DNA of 64,000 nt. Source: Mizuhopecten yessoensis (taxonomy: Eukaryota). The translations under genes were made by a program, and so were the position numbers. Numbering within the stretch: the first letter of the stretch is position 1; each line of letters opens with the position of its first letter. The stretch is taken from positions 837,616-901,615 of the forward strand of contig NW_018408884.1 of the NCBI RefSeq assembly GCF_002113885.1. Reading direction: 5' to 3'. Shown in pieces: positions 17,388 through 41,522 of this stretch. The notes beneath the pieces were generated by a model, which saw only the letters and a list, made by a program, of their open reading frames with translations, ran no database searches and was not told the origin of the DNA.

Positions 17388-17578
17388 GATGCAAATAATT
17401 ATCGATTAGGCTCCGTTTTCCATTGAACAGGTAACAAAACAATTGTTTCTTGCATTATCAATCAACAGTCAAAACTATAGGGTATTAGGACAAACCCAAA
17501 TAAATGTTTCTCTGAGGCCAAACCAAACATTTTGAGTCGTACAATCACTCACATTTTGATTATAGGGAAGTAATATTG

Positions 17579-17665
17579 GAGGCACGGTAGTCCAGTGGTT
17601 GGACGCCGGGCTCATGACCGAAGGGTTGCGGGTTCGCGCCACGGCACGGCAATGTGTTGTATCTT
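17579..17665 (+). mobile_element. tRNA-derived SINE head fragment
   Basis: A-box GGTAGTCCAGTGG and B-box GGGTTCG; matches the head of the SINE at 56575. Confidence 0.65.
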
Positions 17666-18587: not shown

Positions 18588-19926
18588 CAACAAAAGGCCC
18601 AGAGGGCCTGTATCACTCACCTGAATATAGATTTAAAGGTTATACCTCTATTTCTCCTATCGGGCCCCACCCCTCTTCATCTAGGAGGGCCACACCCACA
18701 GTTTATACAAAATTGAGTCACCTTGGCCCAAGGATGCTCGACTAAATTAGAATAAAATCCCTTAATCCCTATGGTAAAGAGATTTTAAAGGTTTTACCTT
18801 TATTTCGCCTATTGGGCCCTGCCCTTCTGCCCCCTGGGGGACCACACCCACTGCTTATACAAAATTGAGTCCCCTTGGCCTAAGGATACTTCAGACTAAA
18901 TAAGGATAAAATCCTTTAATCCCTATGGTAAAGAGATTTTAAAGGTTTTACCTCTATTTCCCCTATTGGGCCCCGCCTCTCTGCCTCCAGGAGGGTCAGA
19001 CACACCGTTTATAAAAAAACTGGTTCCCCTTCACCCAAGTGTGCTTCATACCAAATTTGGACAAAATCCTGTCATTCCTACAGAAGAAGAAGGATTTTGA
19101 AGAATTTGCTATGTTTCCCCTATTGGGCCCCTTCCTTCTGCCCCCAGGGGGGCCACACTCGCTGTTTAAACAAAATTTACTCCTTTTTGCCCAAGGATGC
19201 TCCAGACTAAATTAGGATAAAATCCCTTAATCCCTATGGTAGAAGAGATTATAAAGGTTTTACCTCTATTTCCCCTATTGGACCCTGCCCCTCAGGTCCC
19301 AGGGGGGCCACACCCAACGTTTAAACAAAATTGGTTCCTCTTTACCCAAGAATGCTCCACACCAAATATGGACCAAATCCTTTCATTCCTACAGATGAAG
19401 AAGGATTTTAAAGAATAATTTGCTATGTTTCCCCTATTGGGCCCCACCCCTCAGGCCCCTGGGAGGCCAGACCCACCATTTATACAAAATTGGTTCCCCT
19501 TTCTCCCAAGAATCCTTCAGACCAAATCCTTTCATTCCTACAGAAGAAGAAGGATTTTAAAGAATAATTTGCTATGTTTCCCCTATTGGGCCCCTCCACT
19601 CAGGCCCCTGGGGGGCCAGACCCTCGGTGTATACAAAATTGGTTCCCCTTTACCCAAGGATGCTTTAGACCAAATATGGAACAAATCCTTTCATTCCTAC
19701 AGAAGAAGAAGGATTTTAAAGAATTTGCTATATTTCCCTTACTGGGCCCGGCCCCTCAGCCCCCAGGGGGAACAGACCCACGGTGTATACAAAGTTGGTT
19801 CCCCTTCCTCCAAGGATGCTTCTGACTAAATTTGGTCAAAATCTGCTCAGTTATTCATGATTAGTAGCGATTTTTAGGAAAAGTTGACAGACGGACGACA
19901 GACGCTGCGGTATGGCATAAGCTAAA
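18588..19926 (+). mobile_element. HINE-like element with internal satellite-like repeats
   Basis: 5' AACAAAAGGCCC...CTCACCTG, about 9 internal units, GACGGACGAC microsatellite and GGCATAAGCT end. Confidence 0.72.
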
Positions 19927-21039
19927 ACTGTTGATTCAACATTGTGTAAAGGTCAACTGATTGACAGAACAGTGTAGATGAGATTATGTTGAGCAACAAT
20001 CGTAAAACATATCACAAGACCGACCTGGATGTACGAGTCTAGAAATAGTTCAAGGTCAGTTTGTGAATTGAACAAGAATGCCATGGAATCGAAGATGGTG
20101 TGTCACCTGCCGCCCCCCCCCACCCCCACCCCCTGCTAATTTTCAGATTTGTGTCAAAATCAAACTTGAGTGATAATTGATACAATAGACATGTGTCGGT
20201 TGTTGCATAAATATCAAAGCATTACTTCATATGTTATCGCACAAAAGCCATGTAACTTTTGAGAGAAAAAAAAAATCAAATTGGCTATTGAGGCCATGTT
20301 GATTTCATAACTGGTTCAAAATCAACTTGAGTGGATAATTGATACCATAGTTAGGTGTGGAAAATTTTATGAAAACAAAAACAATTCTGCAAAGGTTATT
20401 GCATGGAAACCACTTCAAATGGCCACTGGTGGTATTATTGAATTTCAAAATCAATCTGTTCTTTTATAGTTATCAAATAGAAACCACCTCAGGCCATACT
20501 GAACGTCAGGTCTGTGTCAAAAACAAACCTGTGCAAGCTCTTGTAGAATTTTTCATGAAAATTAAATCAATCTTTTTAGAGTTATCACACACCTCAGTTG
20601 TTGAAATCGAAATCCAAGATGGCCACCGGCAGCTATATTTAATTTCAGACCAGTCTAGAGGTCGAATTTATGCATGGATTAATGCTATAATTATTTTTTG
20701 GGAAGTTTCATGAAAATCAAAGTACTCCTTTGAGAGTTATTGCCCAGAAAACTTCATGCAGATAATCCATTGGGCGATGCCAACACTGATGGATCAATAC
20801 CTATAGGTCACGTTCACAGGCGAAAAAATACAAAGAGCACAAAACAATCTTCAGTATTCTGTAAAATAGAACAAGAACACCATCGGTTTATGTTGAAATA
20901 CTTCATTTCTCTTTAAAAGGTAAAATATAATTTAAAGCACAATTAATTGCATCGGAAAAACAACATACTTTTCTGTTATAACTACATATATACAAGTGAC
21001 AAAGGTCACATATCAAGACATGTTTCATACTGACAAAAG

Positions 21040-23150
21040 TCACACACACATCTCAACCGTGTACACAGGTCTGGTCACACACACTCCTCAACCATGTACA
21101 CGGGTCTGGTCACACACACTCCTCAACCGTGTACACGGGTCTGGTCACACACATTCCTCAACCGTGTACACGGGTCTGGTCACACACACTCCTCAACCGT
21201 GTACACAGGTCTGGTCACACACACTCCTCAACCGTGTACACAGGTCTGGTCACACACACTCCTCAACCGTGTACACAGGTCTGGTCACACACACTCCTCA
21301 ACCGTGTACACAGGTCTGGTCACACACACTCCTCAACCGTGTACACAGGTCTGGTCACACACACTCCTCAACCGTGTACACAGGTCTGGTCACACACACT
21401 CCTCAACCGTGTACACAGGTCTGGTCACACACACTCCTCAACCGTGTACACAGGTCTGGTCACACACACTCCTCAACCGTGTACACAGGTCTGGTCACAC
21501 ACACTCCTCAACCGTGTACACAGGTCTGGTCACACACACTCCTCAACCGTGTACACAGGTCTGGTCACACACACTCCTCAACCGTGTACACAGGTCTGGT
21601 CACACACACTCCTCAACCGTGTACACAGGTCTGGTCACACACACTCCTCAACCGTGTACACAGGTCTGGTCACACACACTCCTCAACCGTGTACACAGGT
21701 CTGGTCACACACACTCCTCAACCGTGTACACAGGTCTGGTCACACACACTCCTCAACCGTGTACACAGGTCTGGTCACACACACTCCTCAACCGTGTACA
21801 CAGGTCTGGTCACACACACTCCTCAACCGTGTACACAGGTCTGGTCACACACATTCCTCAACCGTGTACACAGGTCTGGTCACACACACTCCTCAACCGT
21901 GTACACAGGTCTGGTCACACACACTCCTCAACCGTGTACACAGGTCTGGTCACACACACTCCTCAACCGTGTACACAGGTCTGGTCACACACACTCCTCA
22001 ACCGTGTACACAGGTCTGGTCACACACACTCCTCAACCGTGTACACAGGTCTGGTCACACACACTCCTCAACCGTGTACACAGGTCTGGTCACACACACT
22101 CCTCAACCGTGTACACAGGTCTGGTCACACACACTCCTCAACCGTGTACACAGGTCTGGTCACACACACTCCTCAACCGTGTACACAGGTCTGGTCACAC
22201 ACACTCCTCAACCGTGTACACAGGTCTGGTCACACACACTCCTCAACCGTGTACACAGGTCTGGTCACACACACTCCTCAACCGTGTACACAGGTCTGGT
22301 CACACACACTCCTCAACCGTGTACACAGGTCTGGTCACACACACTCCTCAACCGTGTACACAGGTCTGGTCACACACACTCCTCAACCGTGTACACAGGT
22401 CTGGTCACACACACTCCTCAACCGTGTACACAGGTCTGGTCACACACACTCCTCAACCGTGTACACAGGTCTGGTCACACACACTCCTCAACCGTGTACA
22501 CAGGTCTGGTCACACACACTCCTCAACCGTGTACACAGGTCTGGTCACACACATTCCTCAACCGTGTACACAGGTCTGGTCACACACATTCCTCAACCAT
22601 GTACACAGGTCTGGTCACACACACTCCTCAACCGTGTACACAGGTCTGGTCACACACACTCCTCAACCATGTACACAGGTCTGGTCACACACACTCCTCA
22701 ACCGTGTACACAGGTCTGGTCACACACACTCCTCAACCATGTACACAGGTCTGGTCACACACACTCCTCAACCGTGTACACAGGTCTGGTCACACACACT
22801 CCTCAACCATGTACACAGGTCTGGTCACACACACTCCTCAACCGTGTACACAGGTCTGGTCACACACACTCCTCAACCATGTACACAGGTCTGGTCACAC
22901 ACACTCCTCAACCGTGTACACAGGTCTGGTCACACACACTCCTCAACCATGTACACAGGTCTGGTCACACACATTCCTCAACCGTGTACACAGGTCTGGT
23001 CACACACATTCCTCAACCATGTACACATGTCTGGTCACACACACTCCTCAACCGTGTACACAGGTCTAGTCACACACATTCCTCAACAGTGTACACGGGT
23101 CTGGTCACACATATTTCTTAACCGTGTACACAGGTCTGGTCACACACATT
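21040..23150. repeat. Minisatellite, 35-bp unit, ~60 near-identical copies
   Basis: GGTCTGGTCACACACACTCCTCAACCGTGTACACA repeated. Confidence 0.98.
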
Positions 23151-24747
23151 TCAAACCAAGGCAGACGCAATGTTATCAAGTTCAGCAAGTTTACATCTCA
23201 TTTCATCTTAAAAGACAAATTAGCATACCATTTCTTTTAAAAATAAACAGGGGAATCTAAGGACTCCACAAGACAGATGTGTCCGGTATCTGAACCACTG
23301 TTGATCAGGAGCCGCATCTAGGAAGTGATACACTGAAACATGTTATAAAAGTTCCATATCCAGTAGTCCAGAAAAAGCACTACAACAAAGTACCTCCCTA
23401 AGCACTGCTCTGTTTTAACCTGTACAGATGTTATTACCTGTACAAACTTGTAGGGTTGAGTGTGGTAAGGGCATATCTCTATATTGATGTAAGGAGGAGA
23501 GATACAACCACACTCCACTCAACTCTCAATACATGGGTGTGTGGCATATCTTATTGCTGTGTAAAGGATCTTTTTGTCATTTAACTTCTGTCCTTCAACA
23601 AAAGTGTGAATTCAACACGAGATGAAAGTATCCTTTCTGTACCCACCACAGCGCCCAAGAGACTACCCCTGTTGAGACCTGGCCCTGGGATCAACACGAA
23701 ATGAAAGTATCATTTCTGTACCCACCACAGGGCCCAAGAGACTACCCCTGTTCAGACCTAGCCCCGGGATCATGAAACAATCTAAGACCTTAGTTTTTGC
23801 TTAGTCAATCACGCGTGACGTTACTTTTATGACGTTATCTGTGATTGGTCAAGACAAAACTTAAGACAATTTGAGACAATTTGGGCCTGTAGTAAGAGGC
23901 CACTGGTAGTGAATTTCACCGTTATATGAACCTGTATTAAGGATCCCTGTTCCACTGCTGACAAAACACTAGAGAGTTCCACTGTAGTTTTTCGAGCATA
24001 CCTCCTTAATTAAATTTAGGGGACACGATGAGCCAGGTTACTACCGTCGACCAGGTAGCTCTGTTGGTAGTTAGAGCTACAGTATGATAATCTGAGGTTG
24101 GAATCTCAGTCTAGCTCAGTTGCATTCTTACACTAGAAACACATTTCTTGATTTCAGTATTTCATCTTCATTTTGTTCCTTAAAAAGATCCACAAAGTAT
24201 GGTTTTCTATTCAGAAATGCTGGAAAGAAAGTTCCAACTCATAGCTACAGTTTTGGGCCGTGGTATGCGGGTCCCTAAGTCACTTTATGGACCTGCTTAA
24301 GGTGGTTTCAAAATACAAGGTTTAACTGTACTGGTAAGTAAACAGGCAAAGTCAACACTTTACAAACTTGTTTTTAATATGTAAGTACTACATAACAGCT
24401 TTGAAAATTGGGTAAACACTTGGTTTTTGATTATTATCCTTTCGTCAGTCTGGGTATGTAGGAATGAAAATAACTATGTAACTGAAAAAATGTCATATTT
24501 AACTATTGACATTACTGGAGATTATTTCGGGGTTTTTTAAGATGGTCAGTCTCTTGTAACAGCACACTTGTAAAGTGTAGTGATGACTCAGTGATGATTA
24601 GTAATTCTTTTGAAATTGTTAACTTTAGTTTAAAGCTTCATAGATTAATTCTAGAGGAGTGAGTTACTTATTTATCCATGCTAATCAATGAGGTGTGACA
24701 GTCATTGATATAGATAAAAAGTAGTTTAACTGAAATACTGATTATGG

Positions 24748-25012
24748 AGGCAAGATACTTTATTCCGCTTGTTCCAGTCTACTCAGCTGTAAATGAGTAT
24801 GTGGTTGGGTAGTGTGCTAGAATTGTGGAATGCAAGCTGTGAGCGCCGAAATGGCAGCACCGGCTGTATACTCCCCAGGGTGTTGAGAAAGATATTGGCT
24901 GGTTGCAAAGGCCCTATAACCACAGATAATAATTTGTGAACCGCTTTGAGATGACCTACGAACTGGGTTGTGATAAAGCGGTATATAAGAACCTCAAATT
25001 ATTATTATTATA
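24748..25012 (+). mobile_element. 5'-truncated SINE (CORE-like body, LINE-like tail)
   Basis: Near-identical to 56715-56968; ends AAAGCGGTATATAA...ATTATTATT. Confidence 0.8.
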
Positions 25013-25446
25013 ATCATGTTTAGAAATGTACTATCATAACTTGTAATTTTCTGCATAATTTCCTGATACATACATTTATACATTCTGTCTCTCCTTCTCA
25101 CACGTCCGGACACTGGACACAACACTCCTCTCCACTTTTTCTTTCACACATTTGTTCCTCTATTCACACACAGAAACACAAACTTTTACACCAATACTAC
25201 TTCACACCAAATTATCTCCGTTGATCACCATACAGGTTATATTTGCCTGCTTTCATCCAAAGATTCATTCTCCTTAATATTTCTGACAACACTTTCTATT
25301 ACGCTTAAAGTTTTGATAGCTTGCCTATCAAATGTTCACATGACTCGCCCACCGTGTTACGTATAAACACATACTGTAAGATTTCCTTTGGTAACAATGA
25401 TGTCGTTAACCAATATAAACATAAACTATCAGTAACCTTCTAACTC

Positions 25447-25888
25447 CCCCCTCCCATTACTCCTAATCATGAGCTACGTCAAGTTATCTCCCCATTGACT
25501 ATCCCCTCCAATCACTCCTAATCATGAGCTACGTTAAGTTGTCTCCCCTTTGACTATCCCCTCCCATTACTCCTAACCATGAGCTACGTCAAGTTATCTC
25601 CCCTTTGAATATCCCCTCCCATTACTCCTAATCATGAGCTACGTCAAGTTATCTCCCCTTTGACTATCCCCTCCAATCACTCCTAATCATGAGCTACGTC
25701 AAGTTGTCTCCCCTTTGACTATCCCCTCCCATTACTCCTAACCATGAGCTACGTCAAGTTATCTCCCCTTTGACTATCCCCTCCCATTACTCCTAATCAT
25801 GAGCTACGTCAAGTTATCTCCCCTTTGAATATCCCCTCCCATTACTCCTAATCATGAGCTACATCAAGTTATCTCCCCTTTGACTATT
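25447..25888. repeat. Minisatellite, ~55-bp unit, ~8 copies
   Basis: CCCTCCCATTACTCCTAATCATGAGCTACGTCAAGTTATCTCCCCTTTGACTATC repeated. Confidence 0.93.
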
Positions 25889-26712
25889 TCTACGTAAGTT
25901 CGCGTTTGCGTATCCCAGTTGAAACGGTTCAGGTGGCACAGAAATATTCCATGATAAACGAACAAACTTGGCCCGAACTATAGACAGAGCTAAAAATACA
26001 GTTATGGTAAATAAATAACAATATATTGAGAATATCATATTCTTCTTTAACGCGTCCACTTAATCATATAATGTATCTTAAAATCCACATGTGGATTGAC
26101 CTTGTTTTAAAAAGAAATAATGCAATCTAGCAATAGTCAGCATTTTAGTTTCGGTCAGGCACATCTGTACCCCTCAGTCTACACATGCTGAATACTCCCG
26201 AGGTCAGCCTCGGTTCAGATCTGCGCCTGTTGTTTTCTTTCAGGTTCAACTGTTTCAACCGGTTGAACCGCATATGCAAAAGGGGCCTTACTCACTGGAT
26301 TTTTTAATACAACAGCCCCGATCACTGATTGATGTCCAGTTATCTCCCCTTAGACTATTGGTAACACACTCATTAGTCTGGTATTAGTAGCTGGAATCTC
26401 TTTCAAGAATCACCACCTCCCTGTCAAGTTATCTAACTCATCTGTCCCTCAAGTTGTTAACCCATTTAAGTCATCTGTCGCTCAATTTAACAAAACTTAT
26501 ATATTCAAGTTATTAGTCGCTCATATTGTTTGAGGTAAATTTGAGTACACCTGGAAACTTGATTTTCCTCCACAGTTCTCTTGAGTGAGATTCCAAACTA
26601 CAGAAATATCACAACACATGGGCAGGACTGTCCTCATCAGCACAACGACATGAGATATGGATGATGTCCCTTTACAAGTTAAGAACAACGCTCTCCTGTC
26701 AATATCCCTGCT

Positions 26713-29700
26713 TCAAGGTGTCTCCTTGGTGGTTCCGAATTGGTTGAGTTTTTTCTTGTATTCCTCCGCCTCTTCCTCCTTCTGTTTGAGCTGCTGTTTG
26801 TAGTTCTCCGCCTGTTTCTGGATCTCCTCCAGTTGTTTACGTAGAGCGTCCTTATCTAGGCTCTCCAGACTCTCTTTGTTCTGTAATCATCAAATAAGTA
26901 AATACTGTATAGTTGCTCATTTTTTGTGGGGGTTTTAATTTCGCTACATTCACGATCACCAAAGATAGTGCGAAATTAAACACCCAGTGAATATTAACAC
27001 CATGAATAAACAGAGATAAAAGAAAAGACCTGTTTATTATATTCCTGCTGAATAACGATGACGATAAAACACCCATCAGTATCTCTCTATGTACCTCTCT
27101 AATGCTGAACATTTAAAGGTAACCAACTGGTGTCTGTGGTCATACCAATTAGGACAAGCACCAGCTTTTCTTTGTAGGCAATAGATTTACAGAATAGGGC
27201 TTAGGTATGTTTGAAAACTTATCATTATTATTATTACTACATGGTTAACAGCTCATCAACACAGGAGAAGTCACTTGGCCAACAAATGGTCGACAAAAAC
27301 CTTTAATTCTTCACCAGTTGATTATCAGCAATAAAATCCAATCAGGGCAGGAACATTCTACATGTCTGGCATACATAGGTTTCAAAGCTGCTATTCTTTT
27401 AATTGAGTAAGTTATCTAGTGCTTCACCCCAGGTAGGTTTGACCTCTGACCCAACAATGATCAATGATTTTGTTGTGTATGACTTACCTCCAGGAGTTTC
27501 TGTATGTCAACCGATGCCGAGTCCCCCTCCCCCTCGTCCGTCCGCTGACGTTTAGCTGGGGGCTCCTCTGTAAACAAACAATAATGTCTTCAGTATTATC
27601 AACAAGTGGGTTGGGGGGATGGGGGGGGGAATCCTTTAAAATTAAAATGTTGTGAAAGTTTCAATGGAGGAATCACTGTTTTTTTTCACTAAATGCTTTC
27701 ATATATGATATTTGGACAGAAGAAAATTTGAAATCATAGGGCTCAAAACACAAGGGAGCCAATCCTTTATATTTCAACACATTTATTTGATTTTCATTTT
27801 TATATGTATGAAGGTTGATGTTTTTTTCTTGAGAAATAATCAAAAGCGCTATCACTTATCTTATTGGTTATTTGTGTGGTCTTCCGTGACTGAACATTTC
27901 ATACAGGATTACCGGTGTATACCAGGCCTCTGTACAGTGACTGAACATTTCACACAGCATTAACTGTGTATACCGGGCCTCTGTACTGTGACTGAACATT
28001 TCATACAGGATTAACTGTGTATACCAGGCCTCTGTACTGTGACTGAACATTTCATACAGGACTAACTGTGTATACCTGGCCACTGTACTGTGACTGAACA
28101 TTTCATACAGGATTACCTGTGTATACCGGGCCTCTGTACTGTGACTGAACATTTCATACAGGATTAACTGTGTATACCTGGCCACTGTACTGTGACTGAA
28201 CATTTCATACAGGATTAACTGTGTATACCTGGCCTCTGTACTGTGACAGAACATTTCACACAGGATTAACTGTGTATACCAGGCCTCTGTACTGTGACTA
28301 AACATTTCATACCAGATTAACTGTGTATACCGGGCCTCTGTACTGTGACTGAACATTTCATACAGGTTTAACTGTGTATACCGGGCCTCTGTACTGTGAC
28401 TGAAGATTTCATACAGGATTAACTGTGTATACCTGGCCACTGTACTGTGACTGAACATTTCATACAGGATTACCTGGGTATACTGGGCCTCTGTACTGTG
28501 ACTGAACATTTCATACAGGATTAACTGTGTATACCGGGCCTCTGTACTGTGACTGAACATTTCATACAGGATTACCTGTGTATACCAGGACTCTGTACAG
28601 TGACTGAACATTTCATACAGGATTAACTCTGTATACCGGGCCTCTGTACTGTGACTGAACATTTCATACAGGTTTAACTGTGTATACCGGGCCTCTGTAC
28701 TGTGACTGAACATTTCATACCGGTTTAACTGTGTATACCGGGCCTCTGTACTGTGACTGAACATTTCATACAGTATTAACTGTGTATACCTGGCCACTGT
28801 ACTGTGACTGAACATTTCATACAGGTTTACCTGTGTATACCGGGCCTCTGTACTGTGACAGAACATTTCATACAGGATTAACTGTGTATACCAGGCCTCT
28901 GTACTGTGACTAAACATTTCATACAGGATTAACTGTGTATACTGGGCCTCTGTAGTGTGACTGAACATTTCATACAGGATTAACTGTGTATACCTGGCCT
29001 CTGTTCTGTGACTGAACATTTCATACAGGATTAACTGTGTATCCCAGGCCTCTGTACTGTGACTGAACATTTCATACAGGATTACCTGTGTATACCGGAC
29101 CTCTGTACTGTGACTGAACATTTCATACCAGATTACCTGTGTATACCGGGCCTCTGTACTGTGACTGAACATTTCATACAGGATTACCTGTGTATACCGG
29201 GCCTCTGTTTTATCTGGCTATCTACTTACCTGTGGTGTCGACAGTAAGAGTTGCGTCCCCTGCTCCTCCACCTGTAATCTCCTCTAGCACCGTCGTCTCC
29301 TCAGCAGTCAGCTCTGATTGGTCGTGACCAGCTACTATGGTTATAACTTTCTGAAAAATCCAATCAAAACACGAAAAATAAAAAGATTACTTTATCAAGT
29401 AAAAATCAGCTGCATTTAGAAATACATTATGTACCTGTAGAAAAGTATTGGGACACTCTACCATAACTACAAGGTCTGTACACAGTAGAAAAGTATTGGG
29501 ACACTCTACCATAACTACCAGGTCTGTACACAGTAGAAAAGTATTGGGACACTCTACCATAACTACCAGGTCTGTACACAGTAGAAAAGTATTGGGACAC
29601 TCTACCATAACTAACAGGTCTGTACACAGTAGAAAAGTATTGTGACACTCTACCATAACTACAAGGTATGTACACAGTAGAAAAGTATTGGGACACTCTA

Positions 29701-32700
29701 CCATAACTACAAGGTCTGTACACAGTAGAAAAGTATTGGGACACTCTACCATAACTACCAGGTCTGTACACAGAAGAAAAGTATTGGGACACTCTACAAT
29801 AACTACAAGGTCTGTACACAGAAAAGTATTGGGACACTCTACCATAACTACCAGGTCTGTACACAGAAGAAAAGTATTGGGGACACTCTACCATAACTAA
29901 CAGGTCTGTACACAGTAGAAAAGTATTTGGGCACTCTACCATAACTACAAGGTCTGTACACAGTAGAAAAGTATTGAGACACTCTACCATAACTACAAGG
30001 TCTGTACACAGAAGAAAAGTATTGGGGACACTCTACCATAACTAACAGGTCTGTACACAGTAGAAAAGGATTTGGGCACTCTACCATAACTACAAGGTCT
30101 GTACACAGTTGAAAAGTATTGGGACACTCTACCATAACTACCGGGTCTGTACGCAGTAGAAAAGTATTGGGACACTCTACCATAACCACAAGGTCTGTAC
30201 ACAGTAGAAAAGTATTGGGTCACTCTACCATAACTACAAGGTCTGTACACAGGAGAAAAGTATTGGGACACTCTACCATAACTACAAGGTCTGTACACAG
30301 TAGAAAAGTATTTGGACACTCTACCATAACTTCAAGGTCTGTACACAGTAGACAAGTATTGGGACACTCTACCATAACTACAAGGTCTGTACACAGTAGA
30401 AAAGTATTGGGACACTCTACCATAACTACCGGGTCTGTACACAGTAGAAAAGTATTGGGACACTCTACCCTTACTACAAGGTCTGTACACAGTAGAAAAG
30501 TATTGGGACACTCTACCATAACTACAAGGAGACAAGCCTCACCTGTTGTTCTGTTTCCAGCCCTACAGTTTCCTCTTCTATTATTTCTGTTGATTCAGCT
30601 TCCTGGAGACCTTGTTGTTTGATTAGATTCAAAGCAATCTTCCCAGCCTCTGTATAAACAGGTTTATCACATAATGTACTGGGTTATCCAGTGAATATAC
30701 CCATGTCAAAGTTGTTTGCGTATTAACCCATGTAATATATGAATTTTAAGCACTGTGATTGGATATAAATTTCAATTGTTTCAATTGTGACGTCACACCT
30801 AGGACAAATATATGACGTCATAGACTTAAACACTTGATTCAAAATGGCGGTTTGACATTTCAAGGATGCATGAAAATTGTCATTTTACACGAATGAATGC
30901 CACAAATCTTGATTGTGTGAAAAGGATCTTACACTCGTTTTCATTTCATATGAAATTTATGAAACTCGTCACAAATTTTTCATTTTAGCTTGCCAGACTT
31001 TGGCTGAATTGAAAAATTCTTCGACTCATTTTATAAATCTCACATGAAATGGAAACTCATGTAAGATCCTAAAGATATCAGGTATTTGACATGGTTACCA
31101 CACTGTACAGTTGGGATGCAAGTCCTTTCTTCAGTCACATTGTACTTTCTCTTTACAACTATTTATTATTAAGTAACCAGTTTATTTTATTTTCAAAAGT
31201 ATTCAAAACATGCTATCGACTAGGATGGTTATAACTGTCATTTCCTTTGTTGTGAGGTTAGACATCTATACAACAGCTACAGTGGCTATCGACTAGGATG
31301 GTTATAACTGTCATTTCCTTTGTTGTGAGGTTAGACATCTATACAACAGCTACAGTGGCCATTGACCAGGATGGTTATAACTGTCATTTCCTTTGTTGTG
31401 AGGTTAGACATCTATAACACAGCTACAGTGGCTATCGACTAGGATGGGTATAACTGTCATTTCCTTTGTTGTGAGGCTAGACATCTATACAACAGCTACA
31501 GTGGCCATCGACTAGGATGGTTATAACGTTCATTTCCTTTGTTGTGAGGCTAGACATCTATACAACAGCTACAGGGGCCATTGACTAGGATGGTTATAAC
31601 TGTCATTTCCTTTGTTTTGAGGCTAGACATCTATACAACAGCTACAGTGGCTATCGACTAGGAAGGCTATAACTGTCATTTCCTTTGTTGTGAGGTTAGC
31701 CATCTATAAAACAGCTACAGTGGCTATCGACTAGGAAGGCTATAACTGTCATTTCCTTTGTTGTGAGGTTAGACATCTATAAAACAGCTACAGTGGCCAT
31801 CGACTAGGATGGTTATAACTGTCATTTCCTTTGTTGTGAGGTTAGACATCTATAAAACAGCTACAGTGGCTACGGACTAGGATGGTTATAACTGTCATTT
31901 CCTTTGTTGTGAGGTTTAGACAACAACTGGTTACACTTCCATCATTTATCTATATGTATTAGCCCTAGAGAGAATATAAATAGGACCGTTTTATTTGTAA
32001 ATGTTACATACACCTTTCAAACAAAGGCAAAATGACTTTCTTGCAAAACAGTGTAGTTCCCTGTTCAGGGACTGATTTGCCTGTAATTCCCTGTTCAGGG
32101 ACTGATTTGCCTTATAATTACCTGTTCAGGGACTGATTTGCCTGTAATTACCTGTTCAGGGACTGATTTGCCTGTAATTACCTGTTCAGGGACTGATTTG
32201 CCTGTAATTACCTGTTCAGGGACTGATTTGCCTGTAATTACCTGTTCAGGGACTGATTTGCCTGTAATTACCTGTTCAGGGACTGATTTGCCTGTAATTA
32301 CCTGTTCAGGGACTGATTTGCCTGTAATTACCTGTTCAGGGACTGATTTGCCTGTAATTACCTGTTCAGGGACTGATTTGCCTGTAATTACCTGTTCAGG
32401 GACTGATTTGCCTGTAATTACCTGTTCAGGGACTGATTTGCCTGTAATTACCTGTTCAGGGACTGATTTGCCTGTAATTACCTGTTCAGGGACAGATTTG
32501 CCTGTAATTACCTGTGAGTGTGATTGTTTGTCCGCTCTCCACAGCAGAGGTGATCATTCCTCCCTCAGATGTAGTGATCATGGTGATACCCTGACTCTCC
32601 AGCCAACTCAGGGCGTCATTACTATTCACACCTAAACAAAAACCAACAACATTACTCATAGGGTACGCCAGCCAACTCAGGGCGTCATTACTATTCACAC

Positions 32701-35700
32701 CTAAACAAAAACCAACGACATTACTCATAGGGTACGCCAGCCAACTCAGGGCGTCATTACTATTCACACCTAAACAAAAACCAACAACATTACTCATAGG
32801 GTACGCCAGCCAACTCAGGGCGTCATTACTATTCACACCTAAACAAAAACCAACGACATTACTCATAGGGTACGCCAGCCAACTCAGGGCGTCATTACTA
32901 TTCACACCTAAACAAAAACCAACGACATTACTCATAGGGTACGCCAGCCAACTCAGGGCGTCATTACTATTCACACCTAAACAAAAACCAACAACATTAC
33001 TCATAGGGTACGCCAGCCAACTCAGGGCGTCATTACTATTCACACCTAAACAAAAACCAACGACATTACTCATAGGGTACGCCAGCCAACTCAGGGCGTC
33101 ATTACTATTCACACCTAAACAAAAACCAACAACATTACTCATAGGGTACGCCAGCCAACTCAGGGCGTCATTACTATTCACACCTAAACAAAAACCAACA
33201 ACATTACTCATAGGGTACGCCAGCCAACTCAGGGCGTCATTACTATTCACACCTAAACAAAAACCAACAACATTACTCATAGGGTACGCCAGCCAACTCA
33301 GGGCGTCATTACTATTCACACCTAAACAAAAACCAACAACATTACTCATAGGGTATGCCAGCCAACTCAGGGCGTCATTACTATTTACACCTAAACAAAA
33401 ACCAACAACATTACTCATAGGGTACGCCAGCCAACTCAGGGCGTCATTACTATTCACACCTAAACAAAAACCAACAACATTACTCATAGGGTATGCCAGC
33501 CAACTCAGGGCGTCATTACTATTTACACCTAAACAAAAACCAACAACATTACTCATAGGGTACGCCAGCCAACTCAGGGCGTCATTACTATTTACACCTA
33601 AACAAAAACCAACAACATTACTCATAGGGTATGCCAGCCAACTCAGGGCGTCATTACTATTCACACCTAAACAAAAACCAACGACATTACTCATAGGGGT
33701 ACAGGAGGTCTTTCTGCATGCAATCCAACCAGATATAGAATATGATAAAATCCATTAGTTCCATCCAAGTGATAATGGTTCAGTATAATATAAATAGAAT
33801 GTGTAAGACGTGAATGTCCCAGGGCCAGCTACCATACAAATTATTGACATTGTTGGACAAATTTCAATAAATAGTAATTCTTGAACTCTGAATGATGAAC
33901 TCTTTCAAGATTTCTCAAACAGATTTAGATTAAAAGAAAATTTGTATAAAGAATACTTGATATTTATATTAGTCTGATCAAACTACATTCAGAAATTAAG
34001 TTGCAACAAGGATGCTGAATTGGTTGACAAATTTCTACATAAAAGTGACTTAGTGAGCTTGTTGTTGACCGTAACCCTGAAGTATGACCACATTTGTGGT
34101 ATTCTCATACTTGACCTTTGTATAAAGTTTGATAGAAAAGTCAGTTTAGAAATGAAGATGCTAGTGATGATGATGTCTCAGGATGGAACAGGAGGTGAGG
34201 CTACAGACATGGGTAACATTGTATATCCTCACCTCCTCAATAAATGGCGAGGCATGAAAGTATAATTTTAGTTCCTCGAGGCAATCTTTTCTCATATAAT
34301 CTCATCTTCCTTAAAAACAAGTCAAATCAGCCAGAGGCTCAATCTTTACCTGTCTTGGCTAACATGTTAGATTGTGATAAAACTTGTTAACTCATAGCTA
34401 ACATGTTAGATTGTGATAAAACTTGTTAACTCATAGCTAACATGATGTTGGTTTATGATACAACCCCTTTATCTACAGCTCACACTATATTGGTTTGTGA
34501 TACGACCCCTTGATCTACAGCTCACACTATATTGGTTTATGATACGACCCCTTTATCTACAGCTCACACTATATTGGTTTATGATACGACCCCTTTATCT
34601 ACAGCTCACACTATATTGGTTTATGATACGACCCCTTTATCTACAGCTCACACTATATTGGTTTATGATACGACCCCTTTATCTACAGCTCACACTATAT
34701 TGGTTTATGATACGACCCCTTTATCTACAGCTCACACTATATTGGTTTATGATACGACCCCTTTATCTACAGCTCACACTATATTGGTTTATGATACGAC
34801 CCCTTTATCTACAGCTCACACTATATTGGTTTATGATACGACCCCTTTATCTACAGCTCACACTATATTGGTTTGTGATACGACCCCTTATCTACAGGTC
34901 ACACTATATTGGTTTATGATACGACCCCTTATCTACATGTGGTGTTTGGGTTCTTTTGCAATAGATGACGAATACCATATATCTTTGATTTAGTGGGTAT
35001 TTATTTCCCTGTAACAATATTAAAACACACATGAGACAATATACAGAAACGAACTCGCCTAACAATACATTTACATATGGACAATTCACGTTGTAACGTA
35101 CGATACTTTAAAAGACGTAAGGTTTATAAAACAATTATTTAAAGTAGCCTAGAAAACTATATATGAATATGGTTCACATAATACTTATAATACCAGTAGA
35201 CTACCCCGAAGTATAAAATCAGTGTTCAATAAGGAAAGTGTTCACTTAGTCAATAACCACACCCATAATTATATATGAGCAATTTACGGCACGTTATAGC
35301 ATTCCCAATAAATATAAATTATGGAGCATTAATATTTATCAGCATAAATATTAAGTTTAGCAATAGCTTATATATTGTATTTGACCAATAGCTTACCCTG
35401 TATGTGGTACCGGGGATCCACTAGTATAATCTGCCAGGTATGTATATTTCGTAAGTATGTATATATGGCGATGTTGCCTCTACCAGGAGCAGATAGGAAG
35501 TGAATGGAAAAGAAAGGACAGAGAAGCAAAGAAAACATTGAAGCGGGAAATATCACGCAATGCGACAGGTGTCAGAGGTCAGTTTGTCACTGGTCAAACA
35601 GGTATACAACATTCACAATTACGTCACACTCTCATACATCCCATTCAAAACGAAAGTAACACACGAGACTAGGCGACAGCGATTGCGGATGCGGAGCGCG

Positions 35701-38700
35701 GATTACGGATTAAAATCAACGACACATTGTAAGACAAAGTAATCCTAATAAGACTCAATATATTTTAGTGAATCTTTAGGAATATAAGGAATTAAAATGA
35801 ATTAACAAATCTAACCGGGTGCCACATACAGGTCACACTATATTGGTTGATGATACGACCCCTTATCTACAGCTCACACTATATTGGTTTATGATACGAC
35901 CCCTTATCTACAGCTCACACCATATTGGTTTATGATACGACCCCTTTATCTACAGCTCACACTATAATGGTTTGTGAGAGGACCCCCTTATCTATATCTC
36001 GCACTATAATGGTTTGTGAGAGGACCCCCTTATCTACAGCTCACACCATATTGATTTGTGAGAGGACCCCCATACTACCTTGTGAGGTTGTTCCCGGCGC
36101 TGTGGCTTCTGCCAGTGCTGCTAATGTTGCCAGGACAGAAGAGTTGTCTGAACTCTCTGAAAAAACAATTCAAATCATGCTTTTGGAGAAAGACAGAGGT
36201 GTTTATTTTAGTAGAAAAAAGTGTTGTTTCAAAACATAGTACTGTGGACAAGCCTACATTATTCTCAAGATTTAACATGATTGAACTATGGAACAGAAAA
36301 GGACTCTCTCATTTATAATATAGGTTTTGTCTCCTGTTCAGGTGGAGGGGTCTAAATTCATTTTGATATTTAGAGATTTTTAATAAATAATTATTACTCA
36401 GTAGTTCTTTTGCAGTTCACTAAAATAGACCAATCAAAAAAGGCTAATGAAACAGGTTTTTGACTTGTTATGTTAAGTATCCATTTGTAGGATATCACTG
36501 TGTAATTAAATTCAATTATCAAATGGTGTTCGTGAAAGATAAGTGGCCCAAATTTCTCAAAGATAAAACTTCGGACCTACTGGTAAGTCAATTTATCAGA
36601 TATTTTGTGATATTGATCCATATCTCCCACCTATAATTTGCATCGGGCCTAACCTTGAGAAATTTGTTTACCTGGCGATCTAAGGTCTTCCCTAGTGAAA
36701 AGTCACACAAGTCATTTTCATTTTTCACACATCACATGCCAACTGAACAAGGCATCACAAACAATACAAATCCCCTCGTGTGTAGGTCGAGATTTTATAG
36801 TGCACTTGGTACGTCTCACTTTAGCAACATCACGAACATTGGTCAAGGTTTTCTCACGCTTCACCACTACATGAAGCTTTATAAAACTCCAAACAGAAAT
36901 ACCAACTCATTTGAGGTATTGTCATACTTCAAGATACTTGAACAACATCATATGATTTTGATAAAAATCCAAGCAGGATAAATTTGCTAGAGCAATGATA
37001 AAAAAATTCTATAAATAGTAATGGTGACATTGAACTTGACCTTTTGACCCTGAATGACCAATATATAAAGTTTCATCAAAATCTGTGCAGGAATGAAGCT
37101 GATTTAGTGATGACAGAAAGTGAACATACGTAGACACAAACGTACCTATATCCCATCCCCTCCCTGGCTTTGTCGGGAGGGGGGGGGGGGAAAGAAAATC
37201 AGAGACATCTTTACTTACTGGGTTCTTTGGTGGTTTTGGCGATATTGTGATAGAGATTCACAGGGAGGACATCTTTGTGCCCAACTTCTGTCTGCAATGA
37301 GTCAGACGTTGTCACGGTAACTGTTTCTATGGCGTCCGCCTCAACCTCTGTTGTTTCTATGGTGACCGATTCTCCTTCCTCTAGACCCTGTATTTCTGTA
37401 TGCTATCAAAACAGTTCAAAGGAAATTCAGAGGAAAATATTGAAATTCAAACACTTAAGTTTCAATTTTTGTTTGTTAAATAAAAGTCAATTTTTAGCAG
37501 ACTTTTAAACCCTGTAGACATCTACATATATATTAAACATCTGTATATTTTAGATTTTGAGAAAGTGTAAAACTTACTAGTATATTTTTAATTGGGTAAC
37601 AAAATGGCACAGAAACAAAGTCTGACCTCAGAGTTCGTAAACACGAAGACTTGTTGTTTGTATTATGTTACATTTTGCAACAATCACATGACAATGATGA
37701 CAGGCAGTAAGAAAATAATACTTATAAAAATTTCTTTAACATCTGTGCTATGTTCCCTGTGTATCACATACCTGTGCTAACCGTAACATCTGTGCTATGT
37801 TCCCTGTGTATCACATCCCTGTGCTAACTGTAACATCTGTGCTATGTTCCCTGTGTACCACATACCTGTGCTAACTGTAACATCTGTGCTATGCTCCCTG
37901 TGTATCACATACCTGTGCTAACTGTAACATCGGTGCTATGTTCCCCGTGTATCACATACCTGTGCTCACTGTAACATTTGTGCTATGTTCCCCGTGTATC
38001 ACATACCTGTGCTCACTGTAACATTTGTGCTATGTTCCCCGTGTATCACATACCTGTGCTGACCGTAACATCTGTGCTATGTTCCCTGTGTATCACATGC
38101 CTGTGCTAACTGTAACATCTGTGCTATGTTCCATGTGTATCACATACCTGTGCTAACTGTAACATCGGTGCTATGTTCCCCGTGTATCACATACCTGTGC
38201 TAACCGTAACATCTGTGCTATCTTCCCTGTGTATCACATACCTGTGCTAACTGTATCATCTGTGCTATGTTCCCTGTGTATCACATACCTGTGGTAACTG
38301 TAACATCTGTGCTATGTTCCCTGTGTACCACATACCTGTGCTAACTGTAACATCTGTGCTATGCTCCCTGTGTATCACATACCTGTGCTAACTGTAACAC
38401 CTGTGCTATGTTCCCTGTGTATCACATACCTGTGGTAACTGTAACATCTGTGCTATGTTCCCTGTGTATCATATACCTGTGCTAACTGTAACATCTGTGC
38501 TATGTTCTCAGTGTATCACATACCTGTGCTAACTGTAACATTTGTGCTATGTTCCCCGTGTATCACATACCTGTGCTAACCGTAACATCTGTGCTATGTT
38601 CCCTGTGTATCACATACCTGTGCCAACTGTAACATCTGTGCTATGTTCCCTGTGTATCACGTACCTGTGCTAACTGTAACATCTGTGCTATGTTCACTGT

Positions 38701-41522
38701 GTATCACATACCTGTGCTAACTGTAACATATGTGCTATGTTCCCTGTGTATCACATACCTGTGCTTACTGTAACATCTGTGCTATGTTCCCTGTGTATCA
38801 TATACCTGTGCTAACTGTAACATCTGTGCTATGTTCCCTGTGTATCACATACCTGTGCTAACTGTAACATCTGTGCTATGTCCGATCGCCCATTGGAGAC
38901 AGCAATATCAAGTGGGGTTTTGTCAAACTAAAACAGGGTTTAAAGTGACAATAAATGTACATTATTAATAAAGAGATATGCCACATCCAGAATAACATCT
39001 ACACTACAGGTAAGTAGCTGATCAAAGCAGAAATCCAAGGGAATTAAAAGGACATACATTATCAATTGTAGTGCATCATTGAATATATTTTCCGGAGATT
39101 TCTGTTCAATAATCAATATGTTCTTAAAGAACTAAATTAAACTCAGCCTTTTGACACTTATAATTTTTTTGTGACAAGTGAAAATCACTAATTCATGACA
39201 AGCATCTTTGTGTTGACTTTGATGGTCACATATCTGATAAAATGACACTAAACTGACATTAAGACTTGATATATTAGAAATAGAAAATCAACCTTTTTTC
39301 ATATATTTTTTGTGCATTGGTAAGTTAACTTATAGATAGTAGATATTTCTTGTAAAACAAATGTATCTCTAACCTTTACTTAAGTATGTTCTACAATGCT
39401 CTAAAGGGATTTTCCTTCCGAAGCAAAGACCTAGAGTTACCTACCTTGTTGTCACAACTCGTATCGGCCCCATGTCTGACAAGTGACTCAATCACACCAA
39501 GGTGGCCTTTCTCTGTCGCCCAGTGTAATGGTGTCATCTTTAACTACAAAACAATGAAGTAAAAGAAAGATACAGGTACAATGAGACTGGACAGATTATT
39601 AAACCATCTTTTATTTTTCTATTCAGTAATTACCCAAAACACATCAGCAAGCTATCTTTTATATACTATCTAGATATCATACAAAACAAAACATCAAACT
39701 ATCTTTTATATACTATCTAGATATCATACAACACAAAACATCAAGCTATCTTTTATTAATCTACTCATTTAAAATGCAGAGAGTGAATTGCGTACACTTC
39801 TATTAAAAGACACTGGATATGTGTTTTAATACATAATTGTGAAACAATGCAATTTACATGTTATTTGGAAAAAATAAATTGTTTTTTTTAAATTTGAAAA
39901 AGTTTTGAATTTTTCAAAAAAAATGCATCAAAATTAAACATTTGGTATGCGTTTTTCTTTATCATTTTCTAATAATGTCATATAAGTGATGTGATCCTGA
40001 CCATGTCTTTGGCATCGATGTCGGCAGCATGCTGGATGAGGAGCTCCACGATGTCCACATGACCTTCCTGAGCGGCCACATGCAGCGGAGTACGGTCCAC
40101 CTTTGTCCGCGCGTCTCGACTGATGCCTGCCCTCAGGAGTATCTCTGCCGTCTCTATGTGGCCGAACTGTGTGGCGAAGTGGAGCGGTGACGTACCAAGC
40201 TGACAACCAGAGCAACAGGAACGTAGTCACACATTCATTAAAATAAGTTCAAACAAAAATACATGCAGTATTATTTCCCAGAAAAGTCCCCATGAAATTT
40301 CACAAAAAAGATTCACGTGAACAACACGTGCACCTTCTTATGACATACAATTCCTTAATGCAATATTTATATATACATGATCGTCCTATTCAAGGGAGAA
40401 CAATGCATATATAATATCCTCCATGTTTCCAAAATGTGGAATACCAAACAAGATGCCAAATGGGCCTGTATTGCTTCCCTGGTAATAATCTCACAATAGT
40501 AACCAAGGTTTAAATAATTAAACTAGCTGAATTAAGTTACATGGTAAATACAACCAGTCTAGACCTTTTCTAAAGATTTTTTCAACTCATTCACCCCTAC
40601 ATTTTAAAACTTGACTTGCCCAGTCTTTGATTTGGTCAGGTTCAAATGTGACTTCAGGGAGGAATTGGTTAAACATCTGACTTCTGTGACCTTGAAAATG
40701 GGTCAAGGTCATTTATATAAACAAACTTGCAGGCCTTCATCCCTGCAGGCTACTGGCCAGATTATCTTCACTGTAGGTCCTTTTGTTAAAATTGCTTAAA
40801 GAATTTAACACATTTGACCCCCATGACCTTGAAATTAAAGTAGGTCAATGTTATTCATTTGAACAAACATTGGAGTCCTTTATCCCAGCATGCTTTGCGC
40901 AATATCACCATCCTGGGCCTTGTGAATATTTAGAAGAATTTCTTTAAAGATATCCTTAAACTTTTGACCTCTGTGACCTTGAAAGCAAGTCGGGGTCATT
41001 CATTAGAAGAAAAAAAACCTTCTAGACCTCCATCTCAGCATGCTATTAACCAAATATCATCACCTCAGGCATATTGTTTATTCAGAAGAAGTTGTTTAAA
41101 CAAAAAGGTTGATGCCTGATGGGCTTGTCTATTCTTGCCAGGTGAGCTTTAAACAATAATAATGATAATTATAAAATTGAAGATGTTATAAACCGATTTA
41201 TCACTTGCTAGCTCGTGGGTCATCTCAAAGCGGTTCACAAATTATTATCTGTGGTTATACAAACAGGTTGTGGCAGGCACACTATACAACATACACATAT
41301 TTGCTGTTGTGACTATATACCAACCCAGTCAGTGGTGAAGGGCGCCCCATTGGACATGAGAGTGCGAACTTCCTCTGTCTCGCCACGCTTGGCTGCATCC
41401 AGCAGACGTTTGCCAAGATCGACCAATGACATTCCAGATGTGTTCTTGAAGCCTTCACGTTTGGGTAAAACGATGTTGACTTCCTGTGCCAGAACTTGCT
41501 TTATCTGCTTCACAGCCTGCAT
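26713..41522 (-). CDS. GABPB1: GA-binding protein subunit beta. Coding exons 41522-41325, 40199-40002, 39543-39445, 38927-38853, 37402-37219, 36156-36079, 32631-32512, 30649-30543, 29350-29230, 27567-27488, 26880-26713 (475 aa; 445 aa from Met at 41432)
   Basis: [61 protein letters not shown] ankyrin repeats, [12 protein letters not shown] motif, [11 protein letters not shown] and a C-terminal coiled coil [28 protein letters not shown]. All introns are GT-AG with consistent phases. Confidence 0.95.
27885..29208. repeat. Intronic minisatellite, 51-bp unit, ~26 copies
   Basis: GTGACTGAACATTTCATACAGGATTAACTGTGTATACCGGGCCTCTGTACT repeated. Confidence 0.97.
29435..30529. repeat. Intronic minisatellite, 51-bp unit, ~21 copies
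   Basis: GTAGAAAAGTATTGGGACACTCTACCATAACTACAAGGTCTGTACACA-type unit repeated. Confidence 0.95.
30923..31070. mobile_element. Small fold-back (palindromic) MITE-like element
   Basis: AGGATCTTACA...TGTAAGATCCT ends with long imperfect inverted arms. Confidence 0.6.
31212..31916. repeat. Intronic minisatellite, 73-bp unit, ~9.6 copies
   Basis: GCTATCGACTAGGATGGTTATAACTGTCATTTCCTTTGTTGTGAGGTTAGACATC... repeated. Confidence 0.96.
32058..32514 (-). repeat. 30-bp minisatellite (~15 copies) that reiterates a GABPB1 5' splice site
   Basis: Minus-strand unit GTAATTACAGGCAAATCAGTCCCTGAACAG starts at the donor at 32511. Confidence 0.97.
32600..33697 (-). repeat. 69-bp minisatellite (16 copies) that reiterates a GABPB1 3' splice site plus exon start
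   Basis: Unit contains TTGGTTTTTGTTTAG|GTGTGAATAGTAATGACGCCCTGAGTTGGCTG. Confidence 0.97.
34447..36071. repeat. 42-bp minisatellite split by a solo LTR
   Basis: TTGGTTTATGATACGACCCCTTTATCTACAGCTCACACTATA repeated at 34447-34937 and 35827-36071. Confidence 0.95.
34938..35826. mobile_element. Solo LTR (889 bp), probably minus orientation
   Basis: TGTGG...CCACA ends, TACA TSD at 34934-34937 and 35827-35830; removing it restores the repeat unit. Confidence 0.85.
37738..38881 (-). repeat. 47-bp minisatellite (~24 copies) made of an exon 3' end plus its 5' splice site
   Basis: Minus-strand unit ACATAGCACAGATGTTACAGTTAGCACAG|GTATGTGATACACAGGGA. Confidence 0.97.
40447..41150 (+). mobile_element. 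HINE-like element with TTTGACCCC/TGACCTTGAA satellite-type units
   Basis: AACAAGA..GGGCCTGTAT 5' end, CAGGTGAGCT 3' end; units shared with 57388-59660. Confidence 0.65.

What the first reader, a model, noticed from the sequence alone, without database searches (positions are those of the whole stretch)
32512..33697. Sixteen tandem, in-frame copies of a GABPB1 3' splice site: a VNTR that could set protein length by acceptor choice
Seen: the 69-bp unit is the last ~37 nt of the intron (TTGGTTTTTGTTTAG) plus the first ~32 nt of exon 32631-32512. It is a multiple of 3 and stop-free in the GABPB1 reading frame ([23 protein letters not shown]). All 16 acceptors have essentially the same context. 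The unit variants I could see (AAC/AAT, GTG/GTA, TAC context changes) do not break the frame. Inference: use of an upstream copy would insert 1-15 x 23 aa (up to 345 aa, one Cys and one Trp per unit) between the ankyrin/[10 protein letters not shown] region and the NLS without triggering NMD. Either an isoform ladder exists or exon definition must ignore 15 identical decoys.
Basis: partly seen in the sequence, partly recalled or inferred. Interest (0 to 1): 0.85.

Follow-up and report, generated by a model that had tools for sequence, protein, structure and literature searches.

The report
Silent decoy acceptor repeat, scallop GABPB
An intron of the Yesso scallop GABPB gene ends in 15 extra tandem copies of its own splice acceptor, but the RNA reads examined use only the last, true copy. 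It is therefore an ordinary, already described kind of intron repeat ("mirage" minisatellite), not a ladder of protein lengths.

Summary
A 69-bp unit (37 nt of intron end plus 32-33 nt of exon start) is repeated 15.9 times at 32599-33698. This gives 16 acceptors that are identical from -34 to +33, and the exon's reading frame stays open through the whole array.

The isoform-ladder reading is not supported.
- In raw RNA reads from four runs (two studies), all 17 exon6-exon7 junction reads join at 32631.
- No read lies anywhere in the array.
- No protein in two very large databases carries the 23-aa unit.

The same exon's donor is also followed by about 15 decoy donors (30-bp array), and these are equally silent.

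Tandem repeats that span exon-intron borders without disturbing splicing are already described: amphioxus "mirages" and human F7 intron 7. This scan has reported many of them before on other DNA of this same genome. The array is absent from two other scallops, so it is young. Its copy number rests on one assembly and was not checked.

The parts
32632..33698 (-). Decoy part of the 69-bp minisatellite: 15 complete extra copies of the intron-6/exon-7 junction. Each has a likely branch site, a pyrimidine tract, the AG and 33 nt of exon start. The array ends distally in the original intron sequence.
   Evidence: TRF period 69, 15.9 copies, 98% matches; copies in register; open exon frame; zero RNA depth in bins 32792-33746 in 4 runs
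32512..32631 (-). Authentic exon 7 (120 nt, 40 codons, [21 protein letters not shown]...). Its first 32-33 nt form the exonic part of the repeat unit.
   Evidence: Joints 36079->32631 (17 reads) and 32512->30649 (16 reads); 100% match to P0034 residues 278-317; conserved across molluscs
32052..32511 (-). 30-bp x 15.4 minisatellite that starts 4 nt inside exon 7 and repeats its donor (ACAG|GTAATT), giving about 15 decoy donors. In the exon frame it reaches a TGA after 8 codons.
   Evidence: TRF 32052-32515, 98% matches; sequence; only the exon-proximal donor 32512 is joined to 30649, and depth is zero in bins 31646-32409
36079..36156 (-). Exon 6 (..[19 protein letters not shown]), the upstream partner of the acceptor in question
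   Evidence: Joint to 32631, and a loose end at 36156 that reads the end of exon 5; tblastn with P0034
30543..30649 (-). Exon 8, the downstream partner of the exon 7 donor
   Evidence: Joint 32512->30649, and a loose end at 30543 that reads the start of exon 9; tblastn
26716..41522 (-). Coding span of the GA-binding protein subunit beta-1-like gene: 11 coding exons, with ankyrin repeats at the N-terminus and a coiled-coil C-terminus
   Evidence: P0034 (XP_021377852.1, Mizuhopecten yessoensis, 475 aa) maps exon by exon at 100% apart from border codons; splice sites listed

Best explanation
This is a 'mirage' minisatellite. A 69-bp piece spanning the intron-6/exon-7 junction of the Yesso scallop GABPB gene was duplicated in tandem. 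It was then amplified to about 16 copies by the usual minisatellite processes (replication slippage or unequal exchange; inferred). The whole decoy array is removed as part of intron 6. The spliceosome pairs the exon 6 donor only with the acceptor that is continuous with the unique body of exon 7. Likewise it uses only the donor continuous with that body, although about 15 identical decoys lie on each side. The likely reason (inferred, from the exon-definition model of splice-site choice) is this. Only the last acceptor has the purine-rich unique exon sequence and a real donor directly downstream. Each decoy is followed by another pyrimidine tract and no strong donor, so a productive exon-definition complex forms only across the 120-nt exon. 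The array has no shown function. It is a tolerated by-product in a genome very rich in tandem repeats.
For: - The array and its register are real in the assembly.
- RNA: four raw-read runs from two studies give 17 reads on joint 36079->32631, with up to 70 nt on the shorter side, which is well past the 33 nt shared by all copies. They give 16 reads on 32512->30649. No joint to any other copy is listed. Depth is 0.00 in every bin inside both arrays. A different array on the same stretch (73-bp, 31212-31922) does receive reads in X22, so arrays are not simply unmappable.
- Because decoy use would be in frame, nonsense-mediated decay cannot be hiding such transcripts.
- The annotated protein lacks any insert.
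- No protein in 5.8 billion clusters or 1.84 billion representatives carries the unit at high identity.
- The exon start is conserved and single-copy in Ylistrum balloti and Argopecten irradians. So the junction is ancestral and the array is a young, lineage-specific copy of it.
- Those two orthologues carry their own junction arrays at other borders, and Argopecten transcripts are normal.
- The kind is described in the literature: tandem repeats spanning exon-intron boundaries, including 3' intron end plus 5' exon part, with regular splicing (PMC3087553; PMC3902484); human F7 intron 7 donor pseudo-sites are silent (PMC1557585).
- Tandem repeats are the largest repeat class in a scallop genome (PMC10225492).
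Against: - Junction counts are small: 0 of 17 gives a 95% upper bound of about 16% for all decoys together.
- Only about 19% of each of four runs was read, and the tissues are unknown to me.
- Copy number and even array length rest on one assembly.
- The exon-definition account of why the last copy wins is inferred, not tested. The nearest decoy would give a 189-nt exon, still a normal size, so distance alone does not explain its silence.
- Arrays touching exon borders are somewhat more frequent in the three orthologous genes than a random-seed model predicts (10 of 32 against 5.2 expected, P = 0.015). Pure chance placement is therefore not fully established.
Confidence: 0.85

Rival explanations
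1. Isoform ladder: upstream acceptor copies are used at an appreciable rate and add 23-aa steps to GABPB between the ankyrin part and the nuclear localisation signal, so that VNTR length sets protein length.
For: The unit is a multiple of 3 and stop-free in frame. All acceptors are identical from -34 to +33. In-frame products would escape nonsense-mediated decay.
Against: 0 of 17 junction reads and zero depth across the array in four RNA runs. The annotated product has no insert. No protein anywhere carries the unit. By this scan's earlier (AI, unchecked) notes, in-frame acceptor arrays elsewhere in this genome were also silent.
Confidence: 0.04
2. The array is silent as a coding element but has a regulatory role. 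The decoy acceptors would bind U2AF/U2 or other factors and tune the speed or efficiency of intron 6 removal, or they are used only in a particular tissue, stage or stress.
For: Each unit looks like a complete 3' splice site, and each AG is followed by GTGTGA, a weak donor-like sequence. Both sides of one exon carry about 15 decoys. Junction-touching arrays are mildly over-represented.
Against: Nothing shows any effect. The array is absent from two related scallops whose exon 7 is spliced the same way, so it is not needed. Units differ only at three sites and show no sign of selection. Period being a multiple of 3 is not general: 12 of 33 arrays across the three loci, which is about one third.
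Confidence: 0.07
3. Assembly artefact: the array, or most of its copies, was created by mis-assembly of a short duplication.
For: Long runs of identical 69-bp units (copies 7-9 are identical) are hard to size. I could not lay DNA reads because the one call was used for RNA.
Against: The copies carry an ordered pattern of three variants, and the array has clean unique flanks. The window has no gaps. The unit maps to this locus only. Arrays of the same type sit in the same gene in two independent assemblies of other scallops. Amphioxus examples were confirmed by re-sequencing (PMC3902484).
Confidence: 0.04

Closest known systems
Amphioxus 'mirage' minisatellites (Adh3, troponin C, globin BflGb6/BflGb9, PGBD5)
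   Same: Tandem repeats whose unit spans an exon-intron boundary. BflGb6 repeats the 3' end of an intron plus the 5' part of the next exon, exactly as here. Many units keep AG/GT signals. RT-PCR showed regular splicing (PMC3087553; PMC3902484).
   Different: A different phylum (mollusc, not cephalochordate). There are more copies here: 16, against 3-6 in BflGb6. The unit here is in frame and stop-free. The same exon has a second array on its donor side. Length polymorphism and somatic instability, shown for Adh3, were not tested here.
Human F7 intron 7 37-bp VNTR
   Same: The first unit of a minisatellite spans an exon-intron border, so the true site is followed by identical pseudo-sites. These stay silent although they are functional when tested; the copy next to the exon is chosen (PMC1557585). 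The 30-bp donor array at 32052-32515 is the direct counterpart.
   Different: F7 concerns donors. The finding here concerns acceptors, for which the chosen copy is the last, not the first. The experimental dissection (50 constructs) exists for F7 only.
Other junction arrays in this same genome reported earlier by this scan (for example s1-517129, s1-554996, s1-512415)
   Same: The notes describe 10-43 tandem copies of an acceptor plus exon start, some in frame, with RNA using only the last copy (AI notes that I did not re-test).
   Different: A different gene and an unrelated unit. Here exon 7 is flanked by decoys on both sides, and two orthologous loci were compared.
Tandem alternative acceptors (NAGNAG-type) and recursive splice sites (AG|GT ratchet points)
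   Same: Closely spaced equivalent acceptors. Each unit also has AG directly followed by GT (AG|GTGTGA), the formal layout of a recursive site.
   Different: Those are defined by use in RNA. Here no copy but the last is used, and no exon6-to-decoy intermediate was seen.

Membership tests
'Mirage' minisatellite (tandem repeat spanning an exon-intron boundary) | Head-to-tail array of a minisatellite-sized unit (roughly 10-160 bp) | tested here: met
   Period 69, 15.9 copies, 98% matches
'Mirage' minisatellite (tandem repeat spanning an exon-intron boundary) | The unit contains part of the exon, part of the intron and the splice signal, and the array is continuous with the authentic junction | tested here: met
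   The unit is 37 nt of intron end plus 32-33 nt of exon start. Copy 0 is the junction used in RNA.
'Mirage' minisatellite (tandem repeat spanning an exon-intron boundary) | Regular splicing is kept and the repeated sites are not used | tested here: met
   17 of 17 junction reads at 32631; zero depth in the array; four runs, two studies. The upper bound is about 16% from junction reads alone.
'Mirage' minisatellite (tandem repeat spanning an exon-intron boundary) | Length instability or polymorphism between alleles | not tested
   Candidate DNA runs were listed (X15-X20), but the single read-laying run was used for RNA.
Alternative 3' splice-site series that yields protein isoforms | More than one acceptor of the series is joined to the upstream exon in mature RNA | tested here: not met
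   Only 36079->32631 was found. No protein with the 23-aa unit.
Recursive splice site (ratchet point) | An AG|GT site used as an acceptor, with the regenerated donor then spliced onward | tested here: inconclusive
   The AG|GTGTGA layout is present in every unit, but no exon6-decoy intermediate or array read was seen. Short-lived intermediates would need lariat or nascent-RNA data.
GA-binding protein subunit beta (host gene) | N-terminal ankyrin repeats, a conserved [10 protein letters not shown] segment, a C-terminal coiled coil, and orthology to annotated GABPB proteins | tested here: met
   Exons match XP_021377852.1 at 100%. Hits carry Pfam ankyrin families and GABPB names across molluscs.

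The most novel reading that the evidence does not exclude
Upstream acceptor copies are used rarely or only in some tissue, stage or stress (below the roughly 16% that 17 junction reads can exclude). Because the unit is in frame and stop-free, such use would give stable GABPB variants lengthened in 23-aa steps. A copy-number polymorphism of the array would then change which variants an individual can make.
Probability: 0.06. Interest if true: 0.55.

Novelty: new member of a known kind. Interest (0 to 1): 0.22.

Why it matters
As a biological device it matters little. It is one more tolerated junction repeat in a repeat-rich scallop genome.

Its modest value is as a clean natural test of splice-site choice. 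One 120-nt exon is picked correctly although 15 identical complete acceptors lie upstream and about 15 identical donors lie downstream. On the acceptor side, misuse would be in frame and so could not be hidden by RNA decay. The decoys transcribed first are not the ones used, which argues against a simple first-come choice and for recognition across the exon.

For annotation, such arrays are a warning. Gene predictors and readers can be misled into long repetitive in-frame 'exons'.

Tried and rejected
1. Isoform ladder: rejected on the RNA reads.

2. Database search for the repeat peptide.
- The search for homologous proteins with the 396-aa read-through (a first try was a frame slip) matched only the exon 7 part (9-11% coverage).
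- The exhaustive search gave 20-35% identity matches over the repeat part. The three top hits I scanned carry Receptor-L/LRR-like or DUF7151 domains. I take these as chance periodic similarity, not homology.
- A Pfam Rubi_NSP_C hit of the read-through had no stretch passing on its own, and I disregard it.

3. Fetching the genomic loci by exact protein failed for P0001 and P0034. It worked for P0033 and P0035.

4. A junction-directed amplification process.
- A first null (arrays inserted uniformly; count those within 5 or 25 nt of a border) gave P of about 1e-9 to 1e-11. That null ignores unit length.
- With the proper random-seed null the excess is small: 10 against 5.2 expected, P = 0.015. 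For the two species that were not chosen for this feature it is 6 against 3.6 and not significant. I do not claim such a process.

5. Selection for frame: 6 of 8 periods in this gene are multiples of 3, but only 12 of 33 across the three species, about one third.

6. Literature searches for bivalve or oyster reports of such arrays found none.

7. The spliced gene model was not joined into one query. Exons were searched by reference or compared with database proteins.
Full report
**Observation.** Tandem Repeats Finder reports one array at 32599-33698 with period 69, 15.9 copies, 98% matches and no indels. Read on the minus strand and laid out in register, it gives 16 acceptors at 32631 + 69k (k = 0-15).
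- Each has the same 34-37 nt of intron end, with a TAAT/CTAT branch-like site about 20-27 nt upstream and a T-rich tract ending in TTTAG.
- Each has the same 33 nt of exon start.
- Only three positions vary among copies.
- Copy 15 is preceded by unique intron sequence and copy 0 is followed by the unique exon body. This is the signature of tandem duplication of a piece that spanned the junction.
- The exon frame is open from 33754 to 32489, and 69 = 3 x 23.

The unit occurs nowhere else in the 987.6-Mb assembly.

**Gene and organism.** The minus strand between 41522 and 26716 carries 11 coding exons. They match XP_021377852.1 / OWF38720.1, 'GA-binding protein subunit beta-1-like [Mizuhopecten yessoensis]' (P0034, 475 aa), at 100% apart from border codons. 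The animal is therefore the Yesso scallop, not an oyster. Exon mapping used database proteins against the window, and searches used references. Exon 7 ([25 protein letters not shown]...) is conserved across bivalves, gastropods and cephalopods. Its first 11 codons are therefore ancestral coding sequence that was copied into the intron, not the reverse.

**RNA.** One search for runs and one read-laying run were allowed. I laid four raw-read RNA runs from two studies on 30500-36200.
- The joint 36079->32631 (intron of 3447 nt, GT..AG on the minus strand) is carried by 9 + 4 + 3 + 1 = 17 reads. The shorter side reaches up to 70 nt, far beyond the 33 nt shared by all copies.
- The joint 32512->30649 is carried by 16 reads.
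- Loose ends at 36156 and 30543 read the end of exon 5 and the start of exon 9.
- No joint to any other acceptor or donor copy is listed.
- Depth is 0.00 in all bins from 32792 to 33746 and from 31646 to 32409 in all four runs.
- The bin holding the first two decoys shows no more bases than the 31 exonic nt in it explain.
- Another array on the same stretch (73-bp, 31212-31922) does receive reads in X22, so the tool does lay reads on arrays.

The bounds are as follows. From junction reads alone, fewer than about 16% of transcripts (95%) can use any decoy. Use of distal copies is bounded at a few per cent by my rough reckoning, because each such transcript would add hundreds of array bases and none was seen. 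Since decoy use is in frame, nonsense-mediated decay cannot explain the absence.

**Databases.** The 396-aa read-through found only GABPB proteins, each matching the last roughly 40 residues. The exhaustive search of 1.84 billion representatives found the same. It also found low-identity periodic matches; the three top hits I scanned carry Receptor-L/LRR-like or DUF7151 domains, and I regard these matches as chance. No predicted or transcript-derived protein carries the unit.

**Surroundings.** The donor of the same exon is repeated too. A 30-bp x 15.4 array at 32052-32515 starts 4 nt inside the exon (ACAG|GTAATT...). It has a TGA in frame after 8 codons. Only the exon-proximal donor is used. 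Exon 7 is thus picked correctly between about 15 decoy acceptors and about 15 decoy donors. Elsewhere in the gene:
- a 47-bp x 24 array repeats the end of exon 4 plus its donor;
- a 42-bp array starts exactly at the exon 6 donor;
- two more arrays start 13 and 22 nt after the donors of exons 8 and 9.

**Comparison with other scallops.** The orthologous loci of Ylistrum balloti (L010) and Argopecten irradians (L011) have a single exon 7 acceptor with unrelated intron sequence upstream. The 69-bp array is therefore lineage-specific and, at 98% unit identity, young. Both species have their own junction arrays in this gene.
- Ylistrum: at the exon 7 donor (39 bp), the exon 8 acceptor (58/88 bp) and the exon 11 acceptor (82 bp).
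- Argopecten: at the exon 6 acceptor (51 bp), the exon 7 donor (51 bp, in frame) and the exon 8 donor (46 bp).
- Argopecten transcript-derived proteins are nevertheless normal.

**Is the position at the border more than chance?** A naive null suggested a huge excess, but it ignored unit length. Under a random-seed model, a first duplication of unit length falls anywhere in the non-array part of the intron. On that model 5.2 of 32 arrays should straddle or touch a border, and 10 do (P = 0.015). In the two species not chosen for this feature it is 6 against 3.6, not significant. In short introns packed with arrays, junction-spanning arrays are close to expected.

[quoted passage not shown] They were found again in amphioxus globin genes, including a repeat of the 3' intron end plus the 5' part of exon 2, with RT-PCR showing regular splicing (PMC3087553). 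They are also reported in troponin C and PGBD5 (PMC3902484). In human F7, a 37-bp minisatellite whose first unit spans the exon 7 donor gives identical pseudo-donors. These are functional but never compete with the exon-proximal one (PMC1557585). Tandem repeats are the largest repeat class in a scallop genome (21.7% in Amusium pleuronectes, PMC10225492). This scan's own earlier notes list at least 15 findings for 'mirage acceptor' in this same genome, the ones shown being silent junction arrays. Those are unchecked AI notes. They gave me the term and the two papers, which I then read myself. My literature searches found no published description in molluscs.

**Mechanism.**
- Shown: the array exists in the assembly, only the copy continuous with the exon body is spliced, and the array is not conserved.
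- Inferred, origin: a seed duplication across the junction, followed by slippage or unequal exchange.
- Inferred, choice of the last copy: exon definition. Factors bound to the unique, purine-rich body of exon 7 and U1 at the true donor would stabilise U2AF/U2 only on the adjacent acceptor. Each decoy is followed by another pyrimidine tract and at best a weak GTGTGA donor-like site.
- The decoys transcribed first are not used, which speaks against a first-come rule.
- The account is incomplete. The nearest decoy would make a 189-nt exon of normal size, so distance alone does not explain its silence.

**Verdict.** This is a new member of a known kind, of low to modest interest, mainly as a tidy natural example of splice-site choice. 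Open points are the copy number and its polymorphism, and rare or conditional decoy use.

Noticed in passing
window 32052-32515 (minus strand): A 30-bp x 15.4 array repeats the exon 7 donor (ACAG|GTAATT), so the same 120-nt exon has decoys on both sides. The decoy donors are unused in RNA and would bring an in-frame TGA.
   Followed up: yes
window 37737-38881, 35827-36078, 29430-30529, 27886-29208: Further arrays of the same gene sit at or near donors. The 47-bp x 24 array copies 29 nt of the exon 4 end plus CAG|GTATGT. The 42-bp x 6 array starts at +1 of intron 6. The 48-bp x 23 and 51-bp x 26 arrays start 13 and 22 nt after the donors of exons 8 and 9. Arrays make up roughly 6.6 kb of the roughly 14.8-kb coding span.
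   Followed up: partly
L010 (Ylistrum balloti) 13229-13712, 14473-16077, 17341-19038; L011 (Argopecten irradians) 24691-25964, 47992-48503, 50488-50953: The orthologous GABPB genes of two other scallops carry their own, unrelated junction-spanning arrays. The exon 7 donor is affected in all three species with different units (30, 39 and 51 bp). The Argopecten one is in frame, and transcripts are still normal.
   Followed up: partly
window 34893-35847: RNA reads cover part of intron 6, with a spliced joint 35396->35007 (GT..AG on the minus strand; 5 reads in X22, 1 in X23). In X22 the depth there exceeds that of exon 7. No joint to exon 6 or 7 was listed, so it may be a separate transcript or an unannotated alternative exon pair.
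   Followed up: no
window 30663-30708 and 34099-34132: Two short stretches (about 45 and 33 nt) collect many reads whose ends run on into unrelated sequence on both sides. One has a fixed G>T at 30682. They look like pieces of a dispersed repeat expressed from elsewhere, not GABPB RNA.
   Followed up: no
window 49054-53342, 21039-23148, 61026-62137: There are large arrays outside the gene: 44 bp x 98, 35 bp x 60 and 80 bp x 14. The units of the first and third contain strong donor-like strings (CAG|GTATGT, TAG|GTATGT). They may be junction arrays of neighbouring genes.
   Followed up: no
A 552-codon open frame starts with a cysteine-rich motif that resembles a B-box zinc finger. Neither was examined.
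   Followed up: no
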